Shown in pieces: positions 752 to 34,905 of a stretch of DNA of 35,456 nt. The translations under genes were made by a program, and so were the position numbers. The DNA comes from Octopus bimaculoides (lineage: Eukaryota), in assembly GCF_001194135.2 (NCBI RefSeq), contig NC_069009.1, forward strand, positions 568,873-604,328, given 5' to 3'. The notes under the pieces are model-generated. The model saw nothing but the letters and a program-made list of their open reading frames with translations, searched no databases and was not told the DNA's origin. How positions within the stretch are numbered: the first letter of the stretch is position 1; each line of letters begins with the position of its first letter.

Positions 752-794
752 TTTAACTATCCTCTTTATCTTACTGCTTCGTTTCCCATTTCAG
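752..794 (+). promoter_or_regulatory. Branch point, polypyrimidine tract and 3' splice acceptor of ZNF-1
   Basis: TTTAAC...TCTTTATCTTACTGCTTCGTTTCCCATTTCAG|AATATC; the same 43-nt element recurs before eight of the nine genes. Confidence 0.8.
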
Positions 795-1179
795 AATATC
801 ACACCATGTTGACAGAAAAGAAATTTCTTCATTCAGATGTGCCTCTAATATTCATTGAGTAAAGGAAGACCATGGTACATTCTTCCATACATCAAACTCT
901 TTATATAAATAAAATCTGCAACAAACGATGGGAAAATGCTTCTTGTAGACAAGGAAATTAACAGCAACATCTTCTTGTCTTCACTGTCTGGAATGTAGAG
1001 ATGATCAATTTAGAGGTTAATTAAGGCCACGTAACTTTACAGAGGATTTGAAAGTTTTCACCTGAAGATTTACATATGAAATAAGATGACAGATGAAAGA
1101 AACATAGCATTGAATTATTCTCTCAAAATAGTGTTGTGAACCGTAGAAATAAGGAAAACACTATCATTGTTCTCTGATA

Positions 1180-2394
<1,215 letters not shown>

Positions 2395-3624: not shown

Positions 3625-3657
3625 TCAATATCTTAAGGTTTTCTTGTATTATTTCAG
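3625..3657 (+). promoter_or_regulatory. 3' splice acceptor of ZNF-2 (diverged copy)
   Basis: TTTTCTTGTATTATTTCAG|AATATCACACC followed by the family leader sequence. Confidence 0.65.
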
Positions 3658-4028
3658 AATATCACACCCTGTTGGCATAAAAGAAATTTCTTACATCGGA
3701 TGTGCATTTGATAGTTTTATCAACTTACATTGACTAAAGGAAAACAATATATTTATAAGAAGCATTCATCAAACAAAATCTATGACACGATGGAAAAATA
3801 TTTCTTCTAGACAATGGAATTAACAGCAGCATTTTCTTGTCTTTGCTGTCTGGAATGTAGAGAAGATGATCGCTTTACAGGTTAATTAAACTTGGATATC
3901 TTTGCAAAGGAGTTGACAATTTACATCTGCTGTTTTAGATAAGCAAGGTCACAGATTCAAGAAACATCACATTGAATTATTCCCTGAAAATAGTGACTTA
4001 CCTGAATACAAACTTCATTGTGACATGT

Positions 4029-5351
4029 ATGACAAATTATTCTCTCATAATGAATGATTTAACTAAACAAGAAAAACCTCATACAGGAGAGAAGCCACAT
4101 CACTGTATTATCTGTGGTAAATCATTCTCTCAAAGTGGTGACTTGACTAAACACAAACGTACACATACAGGAGAGAGGCCGTATCATTGCAATATGTGTG
4201 GTAAATCGTTTTCTGACACAAGTCACTTGAAAACACATGAACGTATTCATACTGGTGAGAAGCCATATTGCTGTGATATCTGTGGCAAATCATTCTTCCA
4301 AAGTGGTAACTTAACTAGACACAAACATACACATACTGGAGAGAAGCCATACCATTGCGATATCTGTGGTAAATCTTTCTCACAAAGTTGTGAACTGAGC
4401 AGACACAAACGTGTTCATATGGGTGAGAAGCCATATCAATGTAATATTTGTGGTAAATCATATTTTCAAAGTGGTGACTTGACTAAACACAAATATACAC
4501 ATACAGGTGAGAAGCCATATCATTGTGATATCTGTGGTAAATCATTTTCTGTTAGATTTAACTTAAATATACACAAACATACACATACAGGAGAGAAGCC
4601 ATATCGCTGTGATATCTGTGGTAAATCATTCTCTCGAACTAGTAATTTGACTGCTCACAAATTCATTCATACAGGGCAAAAACCATATCATTGTGATATC
4701 TGTGGTAAATCCTTCTCTGTTAGATTTAGCTTAACTATACACAAGCATACACATACAGGAGAGAGGCCATACCATTGTGATATCTGTGGTAAATCATTCT
4801 ATCAAAGTGATGACTTGACTAAACACAAACATACACATACAGGAGAGAAGCCATATCCTTGCGATATCTGTGGTAAATCATTTTCTCAAAATGGTAGTTT
4901 GACTACTCACAAATTCATTCATACGGGACAAAAACCATATCATTGTGATGTCTGTGGTAATTCATTCTCTCGTAGTAGTCACTTAACTAAACACCAACGT
5001 ACACACACAGGAGAGAAGCCACATCAGTGTGATATCTGTGGTAAAAAATTTTCTTCCACCAGTCACTTGAAAATGCACAAACGTATTCATACTGGGGAAA
5101 AACCATATCATTGTGATATCTGTGGTAAATCATTCTCTCAAAATAATCACTTGACTAAACACAAATGTACACATACAGGTGAGAAGCCATATCATTGCAA
5201 TATTTGTGGTAAATCATTCTCTCAAACTAGTCGATTGAATATTCACAAGCATATTCATACAGGTGAGAAGCTATATCACTGTGACATCTGTGGTAAATCA
5301 TTCTCTCATAGACCTAACTTGAATGTACATAAATGTATTCCTACTGGATAG
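4029..5351 (+). CDS. ZNF-2: C2H2 zinc-finger protein, 14 intact fingers plus one lacking its last His
   Basis: First in-frame ATG at 4029; family-conserved ATG at 4050 (the track start 3972 is TTG). Stop is TAG in place of the GAG of a TGEKP linker, followed by a decayed finger. Confidence 0.9.
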
Positions 5352-6315
5352 AAGCCATCTCAATGTGACATTTGTGGAAAATCATCTTCTCCAGAAGTCC
5401 ACATGCACACACATGTGGGTGTAACTGTATGAATGTCAAAATTTATTACATAACAACAATTATGACTATTTCGTCTGCTAAAAGACAGGGTTTTTTCCCT
5501 TCATCAATACTGTGAATGTGAACCTCAAATTTTTGATAATCAATAAAAAAAAATGTTGACTCTGAGATAACTTAATTACTGAAAATGCCTGTGATTGGAT
5601 TTTGAGGAATTTGTTAAAAAAAAAAAATAATGACTAAAAAATTTATAGTGTAACCATTTTGTGTTTGTTTTGTTTTTTCTTTATCTATTCATTGTTTCCT
5701 CTGGTGCATTCTGTAAATTGGTTGGCATTATGAAGGGATTCTCTTCATATGACAAGCGAACGGCAAAGGGAACTGCAGCCCTTGATCATGGGTGATGCAA
5801 AAGAGGGTGTTGCTCCTTAGTCTGGCTGACACTGAAGAGGAAGGGATAGGATATGCTTTCTATGGTCAGTAATGAACCCTAAGCAAAGAACTGACCTTTC
5901 CTTGACCAGCACAGGTCCTTAGGGGTCAAGTGTTTCCTCTGTTTTGATAAGCAACAAGTGGGTAGATTTGGTTTCAAATCTCAGGCAGAGCCAAGCAAGG
6001 TCCCTACAGCGGGGACACATTATTAATTATCCTATGTGTGCTATCAATCGATTTTCGTATTGTATGACAAAACAGTTGCTGTGAACAATATGTTTGAAAG
6101 CTGTAGGCTTCATGTAATAGGAGCTGCACTCTGTTGTTTACAGTCTTACCAAAGTTCAGTATGAAGGACAGGGAGTCTAATGTTAGGGTGCCTAGTGGAG
6201 TAATCCTTAGTTACCCTGATACTTGGGTGAATGGAATTAGCTGTGCTAGATGCTCACCATAATGTTCCTCTCGGTTTCGACACTACATTTATTAGAGTTT
6301 GTCTTAAATAGAATC

Positions 6316-9056: not shown

Positions 9057-9099
9057 TTTAACTATTGTTCTTATCTTACTGTTTCTTTTCCTATTTCAG
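9057..9099 (+). promoter_or_regulatory. Branch point and 3' splice acceptor of ZNF-3
   Basis: TTTAAC...TTTCTTTTCCTATTTCAG|AATATC, 43 nt. Confidence 0.8.
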
Positions 9100-9526
9100 A
9101 ATATCACATCATGTTGACAGAAAAGAAATTTCTTCATTCGGACATGCCTCTGATATTTTTATCAATTTTCATCCACTAAAAGAAGACGATATATTTATAA
9201 GGAGCATTCATCAATACATCAACCTCTTTATATTAAAAAAACTAAAATAAAATCTGAGACAAACAACGAACTATTTCTTTTGGATGATGGATTTAACAAC
9301 GCCACTTTCTAGTCTTCTCTGATTGATATGTAGAGATGATTGCTTTACAGGTTAATTAAGCTTGGATAACTTTACAAAGGAGTGGACAGTTTACATCTGC
9401 TGGTTTAGATAATAAACAAGATCACAAATGAAAGAAAAATAGTAACTCAACTAAACAAACATATTCATAAAAATAATTAAAAAAAAGAGTAATTTTTTTA
9501 TATGTGTAACAAATTATTCTATTATA

Positions 9527-10501: not shown

Positions 10502-10745
10502 CATTGCTGTACCTGTTGTAATTTATTTTTTGGAAATAGGGTTGTAACTATACATGAACATGTTCATACAAGAGAGAAACTATTTCATGGTGATGTCGGT
10601 GATTAATCCTTCTGTCATAGACGTAGCTTAACTGTACATGAACGCATTCCTACAGAATTGAAATCATGTCAGTGTGACATCTTTGGTAAACCATGCTCTC
10701 AAAAACGCAACTTCTATATGTGGGTATTCACAAAGAAATGTAACT
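10502..10745 (+). pseudogene. Decayed fingers downstream of the ZNF-3 stop
   Basis: Recognisable CATACAAGAGAGAAA and CAGTGTGACATCTTTGGTAAA repeats with lost Cys/His codons and stops. Confidence 0.7.
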
Positions 10746-11589: not shown

Positions 11590-11804
11590 AATGGGACAAA
11601 CAAAAGCACTGGAACCTAATCAATGGCTCAGTAGAGACATCGATTAGGGAATTAAAGAAATACAATCGTGTAACGGGAAATAACTTCTACAACACCTAAC
11701 CAAGTTCCAAGTAAATTAATTAAGTTGATTAATTACTGAACTCGTTTTAATGTGAATACGGTAAATTGACAAAGGTTTATTTTAAGGCTGTAATGGTGAT
11801 AATA
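11590..11804 (+). promoter_or_regulatory. Conserved upstream block of unit 4
   Basis: GGGAAATAACTTC (11675-11687) and GAATACG|GTAAAT (11761). Confidence 0.5.
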
Positions 11805-12454: not shown

Positions 12455-12497
12455 TTTTACTATCCTCTTTATCTTTCTGCTTCTTTTCCTATTTCAG
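12455..12497 (+). promoter_or_regulatory. Branch point and 3' splice acceptor of ZNF-4
   Basis: TTTTAC...TTCTTTTCCTATTTCAG|AATAAC, 43 nt. Confidence 0.8.
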
Positions 12498-12649
12498 AAT
12501 AACATATCATGTTGATGTAAAAGAAATTTCTTCATCCAGATGTACCTCTGGTATTTTTATTGACTTCCATCGATTAAAGGAAGACCATATATTTATAAGC
12601 CACATTCATCAATACATCAAGCTCTTTATAAATATAAAATCTTCAACAA

Positions 12650-12730
12650 ATGATGAACAATTGGAAATCTATGATGAACAATTGGAAATCTATGATGAAC
12701 AATTGGAAATCTATGATGAACAATTGGAAA
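12650..12730 (+). repeat. 21-bp tandem repeat (ATGATGAACAATTGGAAATCT, about 3.9 copies) in the ZNF-4 leader
   Basis: Three full identical units and one partial; single-copy in the ZNF-7 leader (about 26779). Confidence 0.95.
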
Positions 12731-12988
12731 ATATTTCTTCTGGACAATGAAATTAACAGCAACATTTACTTGTCTTCACTGTCTGGAATGTAAAGGAGAT
12801 GATCAATTTACAGGTTAATTGAGCTTGGATAACTTACTGGTTAATTAAGTTTAACATCTTCTGTTTTGGATATTAAGCAAGATCACAAATGAAAGAAACA
12901 TAGCATTAAATTATTCTCTGAAAATTGTGACACAACTGGACACAAACATATTCATAGAAATGAAAAATTTATTATCATTGTGATATGT

Positions 12989-14065
12989 ATGAAAAAATAT
13001 TCTCTCATAATGAATAATTTAACTGAACCAAAAAGCCCTGATACAAGAGAGAAGCCATATATCTGTGGTAATTCATTCTCTAGAAGTAGTAACTTGACTA
13101 GTCGCAGACGAATTCATACTGGAGAGAAGCCATATCTCTGTGATATCTGTGGTAAATCTTATTCTGAAAAGAGCACTTTAACTAGTCATAAACACATTCA
13201 TACAGGAGAGAAGCCATATAATTGTAATATCTGTGGTAAATCATTTTCTGAAAAAAGAGTCTTAACTAGTCATAAACGCATTCATACAGGAGAGAAACCA
13301 CATCACTGTGCTGTCTGTGGTAGATCATTCTCTCAAAGTGCTCACTTGACCAGTCACGTACGTACACATACAGGAGAGAAAGCATATCATTGCAATACCT
13401 GTGGTAAATCATTTTCTCAAAATGGTCACTTGACTAGTCACAATCGTATTCATGCGGGGGAAAAACCATATCATTGTAATATCTGTGGTAAATCATTCTC
13501 TACAAATAGCCATTTGATTAGTCACAAGCGTATTCATACTAAGGAAAAACCATATCATTGTGATATTTGTGGGAAACTTCTTTCTTGTGATAACACTTTG
13601 AATAAGCACAAACGTGTTCACACAGGAGAGAAGCCATATTCCTGTGACATCTGTGGTAAATCGTTTTCTCAAAGCAGTAATCTAACTAATCATAAACGTA
13701 TTCATACTGGGGAAAAACCATATCACTGTGATACCTGTGGTAAATCATTTTCTGAAAATAGCACTTTAACTCGTCACAAACATATTCATATTGGGGAAAA
13801 ACCATATCATTGTGATATCTGTGGTAAATCTTTCTCTCAACGTGGTGACTTGACTAAACACAAATGTACACATACAGGAGAGAAGCCATATCGTTGTAAT
13901 ATCTGTGGTAAATCATTCTCTGGAAGTGGTCACTTGCCTAGGCACAAACGTACACATACAGGAGAGAAATCATTTCATTGTAATATCTGTGGCAAATGTT
14001 TCACTCAAAGTGGAGAGTTGATTAAACACAAACTTACGCATACAGGAGAGAAAGCATTTCATTGA
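12989..14065 (+). CDS. ZNF-4: C2H2 zinc-finger protein, 11 intact fingers plus one degenerate N-terminal finger, stopped by TGA at a Cys codon
   Basis: ATG at 12989, family-conserved ATG at 13010 (the track start 12980 is GTG). Ends TTT CAT TGA GAT ACA TGT. Confidence 0.85.
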   Translation: MKKYSLIMNNLTEPKSPDTREKPYICGNSFSRSSNLTSRRRIHTGEKPYLCDICGKSYSEKSTLTSHKHIHTGEKPYNCNICGKSFSEKRVLTSHKRIHTGEKPHHCAVCGRSFSQSAHLTSHVRTHTGEKAYHCNTCGKSFSQNGHLTSHNRIHAGEKPYHCNICGKSFSTNSHLISHKRIHTKEKPYHCDICGKLLSCDNTLNKHKRVHTGEKPYSCDICGKSFSQSSNLTNHKRIHTGEKPYHCDTCGKSFSENSTLTRHKHIHIGEKPYHCDICGKSFSQRGDLTKHKCTHTGEKPYRCNICGKSFSGSGHLPRHKRTHTGEKSFHCNICGKCFTQSGELIKHKLTHTGEKAFH

Positions 14066-14627
<562 letters not shown>

Positions 14628-17190: not shown

Positions 17191-17514
17191 CCATTAAATA
17201 TAAAGGAAATTGATTGATAAAATGAAAGTAATGTGGCATTATTAATTAGTAAAATGGAAGGAGACCGATTGAAGAATACCACATTAATTAATGCTGTCCT
17301 GTTGTTTATGAGGCATTGATAAGACAGTAAGTTGACAAAGATTAATTTAAAGCTATATGATGATGGTGGTTTCAAATTTTGGCCCAGAGCCATCAATTTT
17401 TGAGACGAACGAGAAGTCGATTACACGGAACATAGTATTTTCCGAAAGGGATGAAAGCCAAAATTGACCTCAGTCTTATTTGAAGTCACGACTTTCAGCC
17501 GATGTCATCTTTGA

Positions 17515-18122
17515 NNNNNNNNNNNNNNNNNNNNNNNNNNNNNNNNNNNNNNNNNNNNNNNNNNNNNNNNNNNNNNNNNNNNNNNNNNNNNNNNNNNNNN
17601 NNNNNNNNNNNNNNNNNNNNNNNNNNNNNNNNNNNNNNNNNNNNNNNNNNNNNNNNNNNNNNNNNNNNNNNNNNNNNNNNNNNNNNNNNNNNNNNNNNNN
17701 NNNNNNNNNNNNNNNNNNNNNNNNNNNNNNNNNNNNNNNNNNNNNNNNNNNNNNNNNNNNNNNNNNNNNNNNNNNNNNNNNNNNNNNNNNNNNNNNNNNN
17801 NNNNNNNNNNNNNNNNNNNNNNNNNNNNNNNNNNNNNNNNNNNNNNNNNNNNNNNNNNNNNNNNNNNNNNNNNNNNNNNNNNNNNNNNNNNNNNNNNNNN
17901 NNNNNNNNNNNNNNNNNNNNNNNNNNNNNNNNNNNNNNNNNNNNNNNNNNNNNNNNNNNNNNNNNNNNNNNNNNNNNNNNNNNNNNNNNNNNNNNNNNNN
18001 NNNNNNNNNNNNNNNNNNNNNNNNNNNNNNNNNNNNNNNNNNNNNNNNNNNNNNNNNNNNNNNNNNNNNNNNNNNNNNNNNNNNNNNNNNNNNNNNNNNN
18101 NNNNNNNNNNNNNNNNNNNNNN
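17515..18122. other. Assembly gap
   Basis: Run of N. Confidence 1.
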
Positions 18123-19237: not shown

Positions 19238-19280
19238 TTTAACTATCCTGTTTAGCTTACTGTCTTTTTTCCTATTTCAG
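19238..19280 (+). promoter_or_regulatory. Branch point and 3' splice acceptor of ZNF-5
   Basis: TTTAAC...TTTTTTCCTATTTCAG|AATATC, 43 nt. Confidence 0.8.
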
Positions 19281-19566
19281 AATATCACATCATGTTGATG
19301 TAAAAGAAATTTCATCATTCAGATGTGTCTCTGGTATTTTTATTGACTTCCATCAACTAAAGGAAGACCATATATTTATAAGGAGAATTCATTAATAATA
19401 CACCAACCTCTCTATATAAATAAAATCTATAAAAAACAAGAAAATAATTCTTCTGGGTGATGCAATTAACAGCAAGATCAGTTTACAGGTTAATTAAGCT
19501 TGGATAACTGTACAAAGGAGTTGTCAGTTTTCACCTGATTTAGATGTTAAATAAGATCACAGATGA

Positions 19567-19949
<383 letters not shown>

Positions 19950-20051
19950 NNNNNNNNNNNNNNNNNNNNNNNNNNNNNNNNNNNNNNNNNNNNNNNNNNN
20001 NNNNNNNNNNNNNNNNNNNNNNNNNNNNNNNNNNNNNNNNNNNNNNNNNNN
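19950..20051. other. Assembly gap (102 N)
   Basis: Run of N between two sequences that share an identical 163-nt segment. Confidence 1.
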
Positions 20052-20648
20052 ACTCAACCGAACAGAATCATGTTCTTAGAAATGAAAAAAACACTATCAT
20101 TGTGATTTGTATGACAAATTATTCTCTCATAATGAATCGTTTAACAAAACCCAAAAACCCTGACACAGGAGAGAAACCATATCATTGTGATATTTGTGGT
20201 AAATCATTCTCTCATAGGAGTAACTTAACTGAACACAAGCGTAAGCATACAGGAGAGAAGCGATATCGTTGTAATATCTGTGGTAGATCATTTTCTCTAA
20301 ACAGTGTTTTAACTAGTCATAAACGTATTCATACAGGAGAGAAGCCATATCGTTGTGATATTTGTGGTAAATCTTTTTCTGAAAATAACACTTTAACTAC
20401 TCACAAACGTATTCATACAGGAGAGAAACCATATCATTGTGATATCTGTGGTAAATCATTCTCCCAAAGTGGTGTCCTGACTAGACACAAACGTACACAT
20501 ACAGGAGAGAAGCCATATCATTGCAATATCTGTGGTAAATCATTCTTCCAAAGTGGGGACTTGACTAAACACAAACTTACACATACAGGAGAGAAAGAAT
20601 ATCATTGTAATATCTGTGGTAAATCATTTTCCAGAAATAGCCACTTGA

Positions 20649-22137
<1,489 letters not shown>

Positions 22138-22641
22138 TATGTGATAAATCTTTCTCTGAGAACAGTTGTTTGATAAATCACAAACGCATTCATACTGGGG
22201 AAAAACCACATGAGTGTGATATCTGTCATAGATTTTTCTCTGGACATTGTGAGTTAACTACACACAAGCGAGTTCATACAAGAGAAAAACCATATCAGTG
22301 CAACATCTGTGGTGAATCTTTCTCTCACAGAGCTAGCATAACTATACATAAGCGTATTCATACTGGAGAGAAACCATACCAGTGTGATATCTGTGGTAAA
22401 TCATTTTCTCAAAGTAGTGACTTAACTAGACACCAGCGCATTCATACAGGAGGGGAACCATATCATTGCAATATATGCGGTAAATCATTCTCTCAAAAAC
22501 GCTACTTAAGTACACATGTGAATATTCACACACAAGTGTAACTGTATTGATATCAAAATTTATTACATCACAACAACGACAGCTATTTTATCTGCAAAAG
22601 ACAGGTTTTTTTTTCTCTCTTCAAATTTGATATATCAACTT

Positions 22642-22838: not shown

Positions 22839-22881
22839 TTTAACCATCCTCTTTATCTTACTGCTTCTTTTCCTATTTCAG
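22839..22881 (+). promoter_or_regulatory. Branch point and 3' splice acceptor of ZNF-6
   Basis: TTTAAC...TTCTTTTCCTATTTCAG|AAAATC, 43 nt. Confidence 0.8.
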
Positions 22882-23252
22882 AAAATCACATCATGTTGAC
22901 GTGAAAGAAATTTCTTCATTCAGATGTGCCTTTGATATTTTTATCAACTTTTATTGACTAAAGGAAGACAATATATTTATAAGGAGCATTCACCAATACA
23001 TCAACTTTTTTATATAAATATAATCTATGAAAAACAACGGGAATATATTTCTTCTGGATGATGGAATTGACAGCAATATCACTTTACAGGTTAATTAAGC
23101 TTGGATAACTTTCCAAAGGAATTGACTATTTATATCTTCTGTTTTAGATATGAAGTAAGATCACATAGCATTAATTATACTTTGAAAATAGTGGCTCAAT
23201 TAAACAGAAACATATTTATAGAAATGAGGAAAACAATATCATTGTGAGATGT

Positions 23253-26593: not shown

Positions 26594-26636
26594 TTTAATA
26601 ATTCTCTTTATCTTACTTATTCTTTTCCTATTTCAG
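26594..26636 (+). promoter_or_regulatory. Branch point and 3' splice acceptor of ZNF-7
   Basis: TTTAAT...TTCTTTTCCTATTTCAG|AATATC, 43 nt. Confidence 0.8.
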
Positions 26637-26964
26637 AATATCATACCATGTTGACGTGAAAGAAATTTCTTCATTCAGATGTGCCTATATTTTTATCAAC
26701 TTTCATCAACGAAACGAAGACGATATATTTATGAAGAGCATTCATCAATAAATCAACTACTTTTATATAAGTAAAATCTATGATGAACAGTTGGAAAATA
26801 TTTCTTCTGGACAATGCAATTAACAGCAAAATTTCCTTGTCTTCACTGTCTGGAATGTAGACGAGGTGATCGCTTTACAATTTCAGTAAACTTGGGTAAC
26901 TTTATAAAAGAGTTAACAGTTTAAATTTGCAGTTTTAGATGTTAAGACCACAGATGAAAGAAAC

Positions 26965-28377
26965 ATGACATTAAATTATTGTCTGAAGATAGTGACACAA
27001 CTGAAAACAAACATTCATAAAAGTAAAGCGAGCACAGCCATTGTCATATGTGTAACAAATTATTCTCTGATAATGAATGATTCAACTAAAATGAAAAATT
27101 CTGATACAGGAGAGAAACTGTATTACTGTGATATCTGTGATGAATTATTTTCTGAACATAGTGCTTTCATTAGTCACAAGAGTATTCATACAGGAGAGAA
27201 GCCATATCATTGTGATATTTGTTGTAAATCATTCACTGAAGAAAGACACTTCACTAAACACAAGTGCATTCGTACAGGAGAGAAACTACATCACTGTGAT
27301 GTCTGTGGCAAATCGTTTTCTCAAAGTGGTCACTTGACTAGTCATAAACGTGTTCATACAGGAGAGAAGCCATATCAGTGTGATATCTGTGGTAAATCAT
27401 TTTCTCGTAATAGTCACTTGACTAGTCACAAACGTATTCATACTGGGGAAAAACCATATCATTGTGACATCTGTGGTAAATCATTCTCTCAAAGTGGTGA
27501 CTTGAGTAAACACAAACGTATTTATACTGGTGAAAAACCATATCAGTGTGATATCTGTGGTGAATCATTTTCTGAGTATAGCACTTTAATTAGTCACAAA
27601 CGTACTCACACAGGAGAGAAGCCATATCATTGTAATATCTGTGGTAAATCATTCTCTCAAAGTGGTAACTTGACTAAACACAAACGTACTCACACAGGAG
27701 AGAAATCATATCATTGTAATATCTGTGGTAAATCATTCTCTCAGAGTGATGACTTGACTAAACACAAACCTACACATAGAAGAGAGAAAGCATATCATTG
27801 TAATATCTGTGGTAAATCATTCTGTAGAAATAGTGACTTGATCAGGCACAAACGTATTCATACTGGGGAAAAACCATATCAATGTGATATCTGTGGTGAA
27901 TCATTCTCTCGAAATAGCACTGTAACTAGTCACAAACGTGTTCACACAGGAGAGAGGCCATACCATTGTGACATCTGTGGTAAATCTTTTTCTGAAAATA
28001 GTAGTTTGACTAATCATAAACGTATCCATACTGGAGAAAAACCATATCATTGTAACATCTGTGGTAAATCATTTTCTGAAAATAGCTCTTTAACTAGTCA
28101 CAAACGTACTCATACAGGAGAGAAGCCATATCGTTGTGACATCTGTGGTAAATCATTCTCTCAAAGTAGTAACTTGACTGAACACAAACGTACACATACA
28201 GGAGAGAAAGCATATCGTTGTGATATCTGTGGTAAATCATTCTCTTATAATATTAAATTGATTCATCACAGACATATTCATACAGGAGAGAAGCCATATC
28301 ACTGTGATATCTGTGGTGAGTCATTCTTTCAAAAAGGCCATTTAAGTACACATATGAGTATTCATACACAAGTGTAA
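26965..28377 (+). CDS. ZNF-7: C2H2 zinc-finger protein, 15 repeats (13 intact), complete to the HTQV stop
   Basis: ATG at 26965, family-conserved ATG at 27073. Fingers 2 and 5 have the last His replaced (R, Y). Confidence 0.92.
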
Positions 28378-30387: not shown

Positions 30388-30430
30388 ATTAACTATCCTC
30401 TTTATCTTACTGTTTCTTTTCCTATTTCAG
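30388..30430 (+). promoter_or_regulatory. Branch point and 3' splice acceptor of ZNF-8
   Basis: ATTAAC...TTTCTTTTCCTATTTCAG|AATATC, 43 nt. Confidence 0.8.
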
Positions 30431-30832
30431 AATATCACATCATGTTGACACAGAAGAAATTTCTTCATTCAGATGTGCCTTTCATATTTTTATCTCGTTT
30501 CGTCAACTAAACCAAGATGACATATTCAACAGGAGCATTCATCGATACATCAAAATTTACATGAATACAAACTAAGAATACAATATTTTTCTTGTTTTCA
30601 CTGTTTGGAATTTTGAGTAAGTGATTGCCTTAGATGTTAATTAACGGGTGGATACCTTTACAAAGGAGTTGACAATATTCACCTGCTGATCTATATATTA
30701 AATAAGATCACAAATGAAAGAAACACAGCTACAAATTATTTTCAGGAAATAGTGGCTGAACTGAAAACAAAATTTGTTTATAGAGATGAAGGAAACATTA
30801 TTTTTGTGATATGTATAATAAATTATTCTATC

Positions 30833-32240
<1,408 letters not shown>

Positions 32241-33769: not shown

Positions 33770-33812
33770 TTTAACTATCCTCTTTATCTCGATGTTTCTT
33801 TTCTTATTTCAG
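33770..33812 (+). promoter_or_regulatory. Branch point and 3' splice acceptor of ZNF-9
   Basis: TTTAAC...TTTCTTTTCTTATTTCAG|AATATC, 43 nt. Confidence 0.8.
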
Positions 33813-34184
33813 AATATCACATCATGTTGACACACAGGAAATTTCTTCATTCAGATGTGCCTTTCATATTTTTATTTCGTTTCATCAACCAAGGGAAGAA
33901 GACGTATTTAGCAGGAGCATTCATCGATGCATCGAAATTTATATGAATACATTCTATGACAACAGTAAAACATTGTTCTTGTCTTCACTGTTTGGAACAT
34001 GAAGGTGATTGCTTTACAGGTTAATTACGGTTGGATAACTTTACAAAGGAGCTGACAATTTTCACCTGCTGATTTTGATATTTAGTAAGATCACAGATGA
34101 AAGAAATACAGCTTTAAATTCTTTTCTAGAAATAGTGACTGAACTGAACTCAATCATGTTTATAGACATGAAGGAAACATTGTG

Positions 34185-34700
34185 ATGTGTAAAATAAAAT
34201 ATTATCTCATAATGAATAGTTTAACTAAACCAAAGAAGACTGATTTAAGGGAAAAACAATATTCATGTGATATCTGTGGTAAATCATTCTCTTTTAGGAA
34301 TACCTTGACTGAACACAAGTATACACATACAGGAGAAAAGCCATATCATTGTGATATCTGTAGTAAATCATTCTCGTGTAGGAGTAACTTGGCTCACCAC
34401 AAACATACACATACAGGAGAAAAGCCATATGATTGTAGTATCTGTGGTAAATCATTCTCTCGAAGGTGTACCTTGACTGTACACAAACGTACACATACAG
34501 GAGAAGAGCCATATCATTGTGATATCTGCGGTAAATCATTCTCGTGTAGGAGTAACTTGACTCAACATAAACGTACACATACAGGAGAAAAGCCATATGA
34601 TTGTGATATCTGTGGTAGGTCATTCTCTAAAAGGAGTAACTTGACTAAACATGAATATACACATGGAACAGTAAAGCCATATCATTGTGATACGTGGTAA
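34185..34700 (+). CDS. ZNF-9: short C2H2 zinc-finger protein, 5 fingers, frameshift-truncated (YHCDTW*)
   Basis: ATG at 34185, conserved ATG at 34212; five canonical fingers. Confidence 0.8.
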   Translation: MCKIKYYLIMNSLTKPKKTDLREKQYSCDICGKSFSFRNTLTEHKYTHTGEKPYHCDICSKSFSCRSNLAHHKHTHTGEKPYDCSICGKSFSRRCTLTVHKRTHTGEEPYHCDICGKSFSCRSNLTQHKRTHTGEKPYDCDICGRSFSKRSNLTKHEYTHGTVKPYHCDTW

Positions 34701-34905
34701 ATTATTCTCTTATAGGAGTAACTTGATTCAGCACATACATATATATCCAGGAGAAAAGCCATATCATTATCATATCTGTGTTAAATTATTCTCTTATAGG
34801 ACGTGACTCAACAGAAACATACATATACAGGAGAAAAGCCACATCATTGTGATATCTGGGGTAAATCATTTTCTAAAAGCTATCAATTAACTAAACACAA
34901 GTGCC
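34701..34905 (+). pseudogene. Decayed fingers after the ZNF-9 stop
   Basis: GGAGAAAAGCCATATCAT repeats at about 84-nt spacing with lost Cys/His codons and indels. Confidence 0.75.

What the first reader, a model, noticed from the sequence alone, without database searches (positions are those of the whole stretch)
12908..13060. The family's leader and start codon are made from a frameshifted fossil zinc finger
Seen in sequence: upstream of the ZNF-4 ATG, 12908-12955 translates as KLFSENCDTTGHKHIH (a finger helix) and 12973-13011 as YHCDMYEKIFSHN (consensus [13 protein letters not shown]). The conserved ATG at 13010 overlaps that last AAT codon. The N-terminus it starts (MNNLTEPKSPDTREKP) matches the second half of a finger ([15 protein letters not shown]). 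The fossil TATCATTGT lies 85 nt (84+1) before the first real finger in ZNF-4 (12973/13058), ZNF-5 (19647/19732) and ZNF-6 (23237/23322). The shared [13 protein letters not shown] extension is the off-frame reading of a finger (compare the off-frame ORF at 27128, [11 protein letters not shown]). Inference: the cluster ancestor lost the frame of its original N-terminus through a 1-nt insertion, recruited an ATG arising inside the broken finger, and then amplified. This could explain why these proteins have no effector domain.
Basis: partly seen in the sequence, partly recalled or inferred. Interest (0 to 1): 0.82.

Follow-up and report, generated by a model that had tools for sequence, protein, structure and literature searches.

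The report
Start codon inside a decayed zinc finger
In a tandem cluster of octopus-type zinc-finger genes, the last ~100 bases before each start codon and the first 16 codons are the decayed remains of one and a half to two fingers, with the ATG sitting on a shared one-base insertion; this is real but is an ordinary kind of erosion at the edge of a finger array.

Summary
A profile of 104 intact 84-nt fingers from the window hits the leaders at -103..-4 in 7 of 9 genes, scoring 6-30 bits. The 99th percentile of 1800 dinucleotide shuffles is 1.6 bits. Nothing else in the intergenic DNA is hit.

Aligned through the start codon, all nine copies and four Octopus vulgaris relatives carry a single inserted base at or next to the G of the ATG. 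A second, older fossil finger lies upstream, with indels that differ between paralogs.

The peptide [16 protein letters not shown] is the helix-plus-linker half of a finger that has lost both histidines.

- The insertion is family-wide, found on two O. vulgaris chromosomes, so it predates this cluster.
- It cannot be singled out as the causal lesion.
- It does not explain the missing effector domain. Sister octopus ZNF families with short in-frame N-termini share the same exon-2 acceptor and long leader, and they also have no effector domain.

Fossil fingers also lie past several stop codons, and two other start relocations into fingers were seen. I rate this a well-documented new member of a known kind. 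No transcript or translation evidence was available.

The parts
11602..11760 (+). Putative non-coding exon 1 of ZNF-4, ending at the conserved splice donor ATACG|GTAAAT.
   Evidence: The block is conserved in Z3, Z4, Z5, Z7, Z8, Z9 and O. vulgaris. The donor motif is found upstream of six genes (9 motif matches, 0.65 expected by chance). The exon has stops in all frames and no conserved ATG. The exon status is an inference.
12481..12497 (+). Polypyrimidine tract and CAG splice acceptor of the finger exon; exon 2 starts at 12498.
   Evidence: TATTTCAG|AAWAWCA is present once upstream of each of the 9 genes, with 0.08 matches expected by chance. It lies within the most conserved stretch of the duplicated unit, 0.85-0.89 mean pairwise identity. 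It is also conserved in other O. vulgaris ZNF families.
12498..12882 (+). Non-finger part of the exon-2 leader. It contains a frame +1 open stretch (ITYHVDVKEISS...) and a Z4-specific 21-nt x3.9 tandem repeat at 12650-12730.
   Evidence: A profile of leader positions -403..-101 has no hit in real finger arrays at E<=10. Open frame. Repeat. The leader carries 18 upstream ATGs in Z4 and 8-11 in the paralogs.
12883..12907 (+). Possible remnant of a finger linker plus Y-H codons (TCACAAATGAAAGAAACATAGCATT). It includes the in-frame TGA at 12890-12892.
   Evidence: It aligns collinearly to finger-unit positions 65-91 with a local score of 10.5, reached by 220 of 5000 shuffles. The O. vulgaris copies extend the match to unit position 17. 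This is suggestive only.
12908..12970 (+). Fossil finger A: the K-L-F-S..H-K-H-I-H helix half plus the decayed linker RNEKF. It is in frame 0 with the ATG in Z4.
   Evidence: Translation. The HMM alignment starts at unit position 21-23 in all paralogs. Indels between fossils A and B differ among paralogs.
12973..13011 (+). Fossil finger B, first half (YHCDMYEKIFSHN), read in the +1 frame relative to the ORF. In frame 0 it reads IIVICMKKYSLIM.
   Evidence: The frame-0 reading matches the off-frame reading of real fingers, I[IT]V[IT][SFC]V[VM]N[HY][SF]L, found at 26 places.
12989..12991 (+). Alternative in-frame ATG 21 nt upstream of the conserved ATG.
   Evidence: It is present in Z2, Z4, Z5 and Z6 and in O. 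vulgaris copies. O. vulgaris gene models use it in some copies.
13010..13012 (+). Conserved ATG that straddles the 1-nt insertion inside fossil finger B.
   Evidence: nhmmer places a single insert state at or next to the G of the ATG in all 9 window copies and in 4 O. vulgaris copies. Conservation peaks locally at -25..+19, 0.74-0.81 against 0.55-0.65 in the rest of the fossil.
13013..13057 (+). Coding N-terminus NNLTEPKSPDTREKP. This is the second half (helix end plus TGEKP linker) of fossil finger B, with both zinc-binding His lost.
   Evidence: In a library-wide HMMER search, profile positions 14-42 align to internal finger repeats of generic poly-ZNF proteins.
13058..14065 (+). ZNF-4 finger array, from a first finger lacking its Cys pair to the premature TGA at 14063-14065.
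   Evidence: Pfam finds only C2H2-type families in the paralogous ORFs.
14066..14618 (+). Further in-frame and then decayed fingers 3' of the ZNF-4 stop codon.

Best explanation
The window is a head-to-tail cluster of nine or ten paralogous Krueppel-type C2H2 zinc-finger genes of an octopod. Each gene appears to have a short non-coding exon 1, an intron of about 0.6-2.3 kb, and one large exon. That exon begins with a 385-512-nt leader and then encodes only fingers.

The last ~100-125 nt of the leader are the decayed 5' end of the finger array. They comprise an internally deleted finger (fossil A) and the first half of a second finger (fossil B). Translation most likely starts at the conserved ATG. 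This ATG lies in the middle of fossil B, on a one-base insertion. The insertion throws the Cys half of that finger out of frame and leaves the helix/linker half in frame with the array. The helix/linker half, having no partner Cys pair, has lost both His and now serves as a 16-residue non-finger N-terminal tail.

The lesion arose once, before the family spread within and between chromosomes, and every copy inherited it.

Shown: the homology, the position and sharing of the insertion, and the extent of the fossil. Inferred: that the ATG is the functional start, that the leader is untranslated, the exon structure, and the order of the lesions.
For: - Finger-HMM hits in the leaders against shuffles, and their absence from all other intergenic DNA.
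- BLASTN of a leader against real fingers.
- Alignments that run from the fossil into the real fingers place one insert at the ATG in 9 of 9 window copies and 4 of 4 O. vulgaris copies.
- Constant 85-nt spacing.
- Indels that are not multiples of 3 vary among paralogs upstream of about -45, as expected for non-coding DNA. As a result, frame 0 reads fossil A in different frames in Z2, Z7 and Z8 versus Z4, Z5, Z6 and Z9.
- An in-frame stop at about -120 in most copies.
- A local conservation peak at the ATG.
- O. vulgaris gene models start at this ATG or at the one 21 nt upstream, as single-exon CDS with no upstream CDS called.
- Acceptor and donor conservation.
- ORFs of 300-470 codons are kept in about 30% GC DNA across paralogs that are 20-30% diverged.
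Against: - No transcript, ribosome-profiling or proteomic data could be consulted.
- If the leader runs from the inferred acceptor, it carries 8-18 upstream ATGs. That is awkward for scanning initiation. It may mean there is an unrecognised intron or a transcription start closer to the ATG.
- Four of the nine window genes have an earlier in-frame ATG.
- Z4 itself looks partly degraded: its first finger lacks its Cys pair, and there is a premature stop at 14063.
- None of the window's ORFs is in the protein collection as an exact sequence.
Confidence: 0.72

Rival explanations
1. The family began as a 5'-truncated copy of the 3' part of a finger array that landed behind an existing exon-2 leader. 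The first fingers never had a start codon of their own and decayed, and the first usable ATG was adopted. The 1-nt insertion is then a consequence of relaxed constraint, or a lucky repair, rather than the cause of N-terminal loss.
For: Finger homology begins at the same unit position (21-23) in all paralogs, like a breakpoint. A live example of a 5'-truncated array copy lies at 22134-22541, 340 nt upstream of the Z6 acceptor. It is 93% identical to Z6's last 4.5 fingers.
Against: A collinear, marginally significant remnant of the preceding linker lies just upstream of fossil A. In O. vulgaris the match extends to unit position 17. Both suggest an internal deletion rather than an end. Sister families align across the same region with their first real finger opposite the family's first real finger.
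Confidence: 0.18
2. The fossil segment is intronic or spliced around. The real protein starts in an upstream coding exon, possibly an effector domain, that joins the fingers in frame.
For: Frame +1 immediately after the conserved acceptor is open for 20-88 codons in all copies and gives a similar peptide, ISHHVDVKEISSFRC..IFI.FH.LKED.IF. The long leader rich in upstream ATGs is unusual.
Against: - That frame is closed by stops before the fingers in every copy, and closed early in Z1, Z2 and Z6.
- By reading the alignment (not computed), a TGA lies two codons before the conserved donor of the candidate exon 1 in most copies.
- The O. vulgaris annotation calls no upstream CDS.
- A database fragment (P0125) reads straight through the leader into the N-terminus.
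- The ATG and its context are conserved in all copies.
Confidence: 0.07
3. The copies are non-functional relics, and the conserved ATG is conserved only by recent common descent.
For: Z4 has a premature stop and a broken first finger. Z1 has irregular first fingers. Finger fossils are common at both ends of the arrays.
Against: Most copies keep 300-470-codon ORFs with canonical C2H2 spacing despite 20-30% nucleotide divergence in AT-rich DNA. The family persists on two chromosomes in a second genome.
Confidence: 0.03

Closest known systems
Degenerate or out-of-frame fingers and decoupled N-termini in vertebrate KRAB-ZNF genes, for example human ZNF252 in the 8q24.3 cluster (PMC2865497)
   Same: Both have tandem 84-nt fingers in one exon. 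Both have degenerate finger motifs lying outside the ORF. In ZNF252 these are eleven complete or degenerate fingers after the stop codon, and a frame shift separates the upstream part from the fingers. Here the fossils lie both 5' of the ATG and 3' of several stop codons.
   Different: In ZNF252 the lost part is a recognisable KRAB box in an upstream exon, and intact orthologues exist. Here no effector domain is detectable anywhere, the break is inside a finger, and the new ATG sits on the break. The lesion is also fixed in a whole amplified family rather than in one gene.
Octopus and coleoid lineage-specific C2H2 ZNF expansions (PMC12513265; Albertin et al. 2015, cited from my own knowledge because the paper could not be retrieved)
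   Same: Tandem clusters of finger-only genes in octopod genomes. The window's genes and the O. vulgaris loci L001-L004 are of this type.
   Different: The one paper I could search (PMC12513265) contains none of the terms 'exon', 'N-termin', 'effector', 'pseudogen', 'degenerate' or 'start codon'. It deals with phylogeny and expression. The origin of the N-terminus, and the acceptor and leader shared between families, are not described there.
KZNF and FiNZ-ZNF gene architecture (PMC10547256)
   Same: A separate upstream exon followed by one exon that carries the whole finger array.
   Different: In KZNF and FiNZ genes the upstream exon encodes a conserved N-terminal domain. Here the candidate upstream exon is non-coding, and the N-terminus is 16 residues of recycled finger.

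Membership tests
Krueppel-type tandem C2H2 zinc-finger genes | Repeated C-X2-C-X12-H-X3-H units with a 28-aa / 84-nt period. | tested here: met
   The window holds 104 intact units, with consensus [28 protein letters not shown]. Pfam zf-C2H2 and zf-H2C2_2 give 12-14 stretches per ORF.
Krueppel-type tandem C2H2 zinc-finger genes | Conserved TGEKP H/C linker between fingers. | tested here: met
   The consensus unit ends HTGEKP.
Effector-domain ZNFs (KRAB, SCAN, BTB, FiNZ-like) | A recognisable N-terminal effector domain in the ORF or in an upstream coding exon. | tested here: not met
   Only C2H2-type Pfam families hit the ORFs. The open frame after the acceptor has no Pfam match and no database homologue. 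The candidate exon 1 has no conserved ATG. An undetected distant exon cannot be excluded.
Fossil (degenerate, untranslated) fingers at an array edge | Nucleotide homology to the finger unit, collinear and in phase with the adjacent array. | tested here: met
Fossil (degenerate, untranslated) fingers at an array edge | Loss of zinc ligands and/or of the reading frame. | tested here: met
   A +1 insertion at the ATG in all copies. Fossil A lacks its Cys pair. In the N-terminus His is replaced by Pro and by Asp. TGA at 12890.
Fossil (degenerate, untranslated) fingers at an array edge | The segment is not translated. | not testable with these tools
   This needs Ribo-seq or proteomics. Indirect support: paralog-specific frame-breaking indels and stops upstream of about -45.
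Start-codon relocation after ORF disruption (ZNF252-like) | A relative that keeps the ancestral upstream reading frame across the same positions. | tested here: inconclusive
   Sister O. vulgaris families share the acceptor and the non-finger leader (nhmmer E 3e-5 to 8.5e-4; alignments). They have short in-frame N-termini. However, alignment across the fossil A/B positions has low posterior probability, and one member (L003 8636) aligns differently.

The most novel reading that the evidence does not exclude
Start-codon creep may be a systematic mode of evolution in the octopus C2H2 expansion. Arrays would erode inward from both ends, and new ATGs would be repeatedly recruited inside decaying first fingers. 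Meanwhile a long upstream-ATG-rich exon-2 leader and its acceptor, shared between otherwise diverged ZNF families, would be retained as a functional (translational or splicing) control module.

Three independent cases were seen in about 125 kb:
- the MNNLT family;
- L001:5001, where the ATG is in the helix of an in-frame finger after decay of a 7048-type N-terminus;
- L003:8636(-), where the family ATG is mutated to ATA and the next ATG is in the C-G-M-Y of finger 1.
Probability: 0.3. Interest if true: 0.5.

Novelty: new member of a known kind. Interest (0 to 1): 0.3.

Why it matters
It gives a precise, checkable account of where the N-terminus of one amplified octopus zinc-finger family came from. 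It shows that the boundaries of these ORFs move within the finger array.

For annotation, finger-HMM hits extend about 100 nt 5' of the true start and up to about 220 nt 3' of stop codons. Longest-ORF gene models will pick inconsistent starts, either the family ATG or the one 21 nt upstream.

For the biology of the cephalopod ZNF expansion, the result argues that the finger-only design is old and shared between families, not the by-product of this one frameshift. It also points to a conserved two-exon architecture with a long leader that nobody seems to have described.

It does not open a long-standing question or reveal a new mechanism.

Tried and rejected
- Full-length protein search and the profile search of 1.84 billion representatives. 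Both were swamped by generic poly-ZNF proteins and were of no use for finding relatives. The second did show that profile positions 14-42 align to internal fingers.
- Exact look-ups of 12 alternative ORF forms from the window. None is on record, so no gene model for the window itself was obtained.
- Codon-position divergence, to test coding constraint on the -39..-1 stretch and on the N-terminus. It was uninformative, because even real fingers show similar divergence at all three positions among paralogs.
- Search for older fossils. A profile of leader positions -403..-101 against real arrays gave no hit at E<=10.
- The peptide in the open frame after the acceptor. It has no Pfam match at any meaningful level and no database homologue. 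The idea that it is a lost effector domain therefore gained no support.
- Rfam on the whole window gave 0 matches. The fold of the Z4 leader has z = -1.87, which is unremarkable and partly due to its tandem repeat.
- Albertin et al. 2015 could not be retrieved.
- The alignment of L003:8636's degenerate first finger (YDCGMYKMSF) to fossil B looked at first like the sought intact ancestral frame. I rejected it as positional homology, because its close paralogue L003:784 aligns that finger to the family's first real finger.

Full report
WHAT THE WINDOW IS

The 35.5-kb window has seven N gaps. It carries nine head-to-tail paralogous C2H2 zinc-finger genes on the + strand, plus a tenth copy, Z5b, across an N gap. 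I call them Z1-Z9. Their conserved ATGs are at 1180, 4050, 9527, 13010, 19684 (with a duplicate at 20132), 23274, 27073, 30836 and 34212.

The window holds 104 intact 84-nt finger units, with consensus [28 protein letters not shown]. Pfam finds only C2H2-type families in the ORFs.

The closest sequences I could fetch are Octopus vulgaris loci. The leader is 70-85% identical to these, about the same as between the window's own paralogs. The source is therefore an octopod, but I could not name the species. None of the window's ORFs is in the protein collection as an exact sequence.

CHECKING THE OBSERVATION

All three quoted translations are exact, and the 85-nt spacings are right.

A profile HMM of three consecutive real fingers (73 triplets) was run against the 400 nt upstream of each ATG, with the ATG and coding sequence excluded.
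- Scores were 30.3 (Z4), 25.4 (Z6), 21.1 (Z5), 13.7 (Z7), 11.2 (Z2), 6.5 (Z9), 6.0 (Z8), 3.6 (Z1) and -2.9 (Z3) bits.
- In the copies with clear hits, the hit lies within leader positions -103..-4 and begins at finger-unit position 21-24; in the best five it runs on to position 34 of the next unit.
- 1800 dinucleotide-preserving shuffles of the same leaders gave a 99th percentile of 1.6 bits and a single maximum of 11.6.

As a control on real sequence, I ran the same model over the whole window on both strands. It hits only the arrays and their immediate 5' and 3' edges. None of the remaining intergenic DNA is hit at E<=0.01.

Plain BLASTN of the Z5 leader also finds real fingers, including fingers of unrelated O. 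vulgaris ZNF genes.

ANATOMY OF THE FOSSIL

I aligned leader plus N-terminus plus first finger to the model. In every one of the nine copies, one inserted base is placed at or next to the G of the ATG, with high posterior probability on both sides. Four O. vulgaris copies show the same insertion.

Fossil B therefore reads as follows:
- 13 codons in the +1 frame: Y-H-C-D-M-Y-E-K-I-F-S-H-N. Z3 and Z7 still have TGT at the second Cys, so the family ancestor probably had Y-H-C-D-M-C-N-K-L-F-S-H-N.
- One extra base.
- 15 codons in the ORF frame: [15 protein letters not shown], against [15 protein letters not shown] in a real finger.

That is 28 codons plus 1 nt. Both zinc-binding histidines are gone from the translated half. 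This is expected once its Cys partner half is out of frame.

The frame-0 reading of the untranslated half ([13 protein letters not shown]) is the standard off-frame reading of a finger. That reading occurs at 26 places in the window.

Four of the 104 real fingers carry an out-of-frame ATG at the same unit offset (codons AAT-GGT, N-G). The ATG may therefore have pre-existed and been brought into frame by the insertion, rather than created by it. The sequence cannot decide between these.

Upstream lies fossil A, from the K of G-K-S-F-S to the linker.
- In Z4, Z5, Z6 and Z9 it is in frame with the ATG, because about 2 extra bases lie between fossils A and B.
- In Z2, Z7 and Z8 other indels put it in another frame. 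Frame-breaking indels that differ between paralogs are what non-coding DNA should show.
- Immediately 5' of fossil A, TCACAAATGAAAGAAACATAGCATT aligns collinearly with ..H-T-G-E-K-P-Y-H.. On that alignment the in-frame TGA at 12890 is a mutated linker GGA. The score is only marginal, with 220 of 5000 shuffles reaching it.
- In O. vulgaris the match reaches unit position 17.
- Beyond about -125, a profile of the leader finds no finger homology at all.

GENE STRUCTURE (INFERRED)

Paralog alignment shows a textbook acceptor, TTCTTTTCCTATTTCAG|AATATCAC, 385-512 nt upstream of each ATG. It is present in 9 of 9 genes, with 0.08 matches expected by chance.

Further up there is a conserved block ending in a perfect donor, ATACG|GTAAGT, upstream of six genes. 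That block has no conserved ATG and has stops in all frames. I read it as a non-coding exon 1.

The acceptor and the first ~60 nt of exon 2 are the most conserved part of the whole duplicated unit. Mean pairwise identity there is 0.85-0.89, higher than in the fingers. There are secondary peaks at -220..-160 and around the ATG (0.74-0.81, against 0.55-0.65 for the rest of the fossil).

The frame that opens right after the acceptor stays open for 20-88 codons and gives a similar peptide in all copies (ISHHVDVKEISSFRC...). Several points count against it being coding:
- By my reading of the alignment (not a computed result), it is closed two codons before the donor in most copies.
- It is closed again before the fingers, and early in Z1, Z2 and Z6.
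- It has no Pfam match and no database relative.

It may be a relic or chance.

One point is uncomfortable. If the leader runs from the acceptor, it carries 8-18 upstream ATGs.

RELATIVES

The same non-finger leader, fossils, +1 insertion and MN[ND]L[TRS]K.. N-terminus occur in at least three copies on O. vulgaris OX597842.1 (L001) and three on OX597819.1 (L004). The O. vulgaris gene models start at the family ATG or at the in-frame ATG 21 nt upstream, with no upstream CDS called. The lesion is therefore older than this cluster.

The non-finger leader profile also hits the upstream regions of other O. vulgaris ZNF families, with E from 3e-5 to 8.5e-4. Alignments including the acceptor have posterior 8 or higher there.
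- Those families have short in-frame N-termini: MSKELGKSS-YDCDIC and MEKSEKLQELITSEQMIKEKKNLS-YDCDIC.
- In the better-supported alignments their first real finger falls opposite this family's first real finger, and their short N-terminal peptide falls opposite MNNLTKPK... Confidence across that stretch is low.

The conclusion I draw is limited. The two-exon layout with a long leader and a finger-only ORF is shared by several families. The absence of an effector domain therefore cannot be attributed to this family's frameshift.

HOW ORDINARY IS IT

Erosion at array edges is general here.
- The finger HMM runs 60-220 nt past the stop codons of Z1, Z2, Z3, Z8 and Z9.
- Z4 has a premature TGA followed by five or more in-frame fingers.
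- A 5'-truncated copy of Z6's last 4.5 fingers sits at 22134-22541.
- L001:5001 starts at an ATG in the helix of an in-frame finger, after decay of its N-terminal region.
- L003:8636(-) starts at the Met of a degenerate first finger, after its family ATG became ATA.

In vertebrates, degenerate fingers outside the ORF and a frame shift that separates the upstream part from the fingers are documented, for example in human ZNF252 (PMC2865497).

The one cephalopod paper I could search (PMC12513265) does not discuss exon structure or N-termini.

VERDICT

- Observation: confirmed and extended.
- Interpretation: partly supported. The origin of the ATG and N-terminus is supported. The timing is earlier than proposed. 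Causality and the effector-domain inference are not supported.
- Kind: a clean new example of a known phenomenon.
- Main open point: direct evidence for the transcript structure and the initiation site.

Noticed in passing
window 787-801, 3650-3664, 9092-9106, 12490-12504, 19273-19287, 22874-22888, 26629-26643, 30423-30437, 33805-33819: A conserved splice acceptor lies 385-512 nt upstream of every ATG. Together with the first ~60 nt of exon 2 it is the most conserved part of the whole duplicated unit (0.85-0.89 identity, above the fingers). It is also conserved upstream of other O. vulgaris ZNF families.
   Followed up: partly
window 6785, 11756, 16987, 25345, 29834, 33235: A conserved donor ATACG|GTAAGT ends a conserved block of about 150 nt with no conserved ATG. 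This is a putative non-coding exon 1, 0.6-2.3 kb upstream of the finger exon.
   Followed up: partly
window 12499-12765 (and the equivalent positions after each acceptor): The frame +1 after the acceptor is open for 20-88 codons in all copies and gives a similar peptide (ISHHVDVKEISSFRC..IFI.FH.LKED.IF). It has no Pfam match and no database homologue. It may be a relic of an older coding spacer or may be chance.
   Followed up: partly
window 12650-12730: A perfect 21-nt x 3.9 tandem repeat (ATGATGAACAATTGGAAATCT) is present in the Z4 leader only. It adds eight of Z4's 18 upstream ATGs.
   Followed up: partly
window 13058-13132 and 14063-14618: Z4 looks partly degraded. Its first finger lacks the Cys pair (9-nt deletion). 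A premature TGA at 14063 is followed by five or more in-frame fingers and then by decayed ones.
   Followed up: partly
window 2171-2386, 5190-5414, 10502-10714, 31972-32221, 34680-34903: Finger-HMM hits continue 60-220 nt past the stop codons. Fossil fingers therefore also lie at the 3' edges of the arrays.
   Followed up: no
window 22134-22541: A 5'-truncated copy of the last ~4.5 fingers and the stop of Z6 (93% identity overall, near-identical over the last 300 nt) lies 340 nt upstream of the Z6 acceptor, just after an N gap.
   Followed up: partly
window 19588-20216, around the N gap 19950-20051: Z5 and Z5b have identical leaders and N-termini on either side of a 102-N gap. This is probably an assembly duplication or a collapsed very recent duplicate.
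   Followed up: no
L001 4941-5060 and L003 8636-8702 (- strand): Two further O. vulgaris ZNF genes of other families have their annotated start inside a finger. In one the ATG is in the helix of an in-frame finger, after decay of the N-terminal region. In the other it is the Met of a C-G-M-Y degenerate finger 1, after the family ATG became ATA.
   Followed up: partly
L001 13459-19358: The O. vulgaris gene model (484 aa) appears to fuse two adjacent family members across an 'intron' that contains the second copy's leader at 17474-18104. This is a likely mis-annotation.
   Followed up: no
window -220..-160 relative to each ATG (Z4 about 12790-12835): A second conservation peak (0.73-0.76), TTTACAGGTTAATTAAGCTTGGATAAC, is both acceptor-like and donor-like. 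It is also partly conserved in other ZNF families. Its function is unknown.
   Followed up: no
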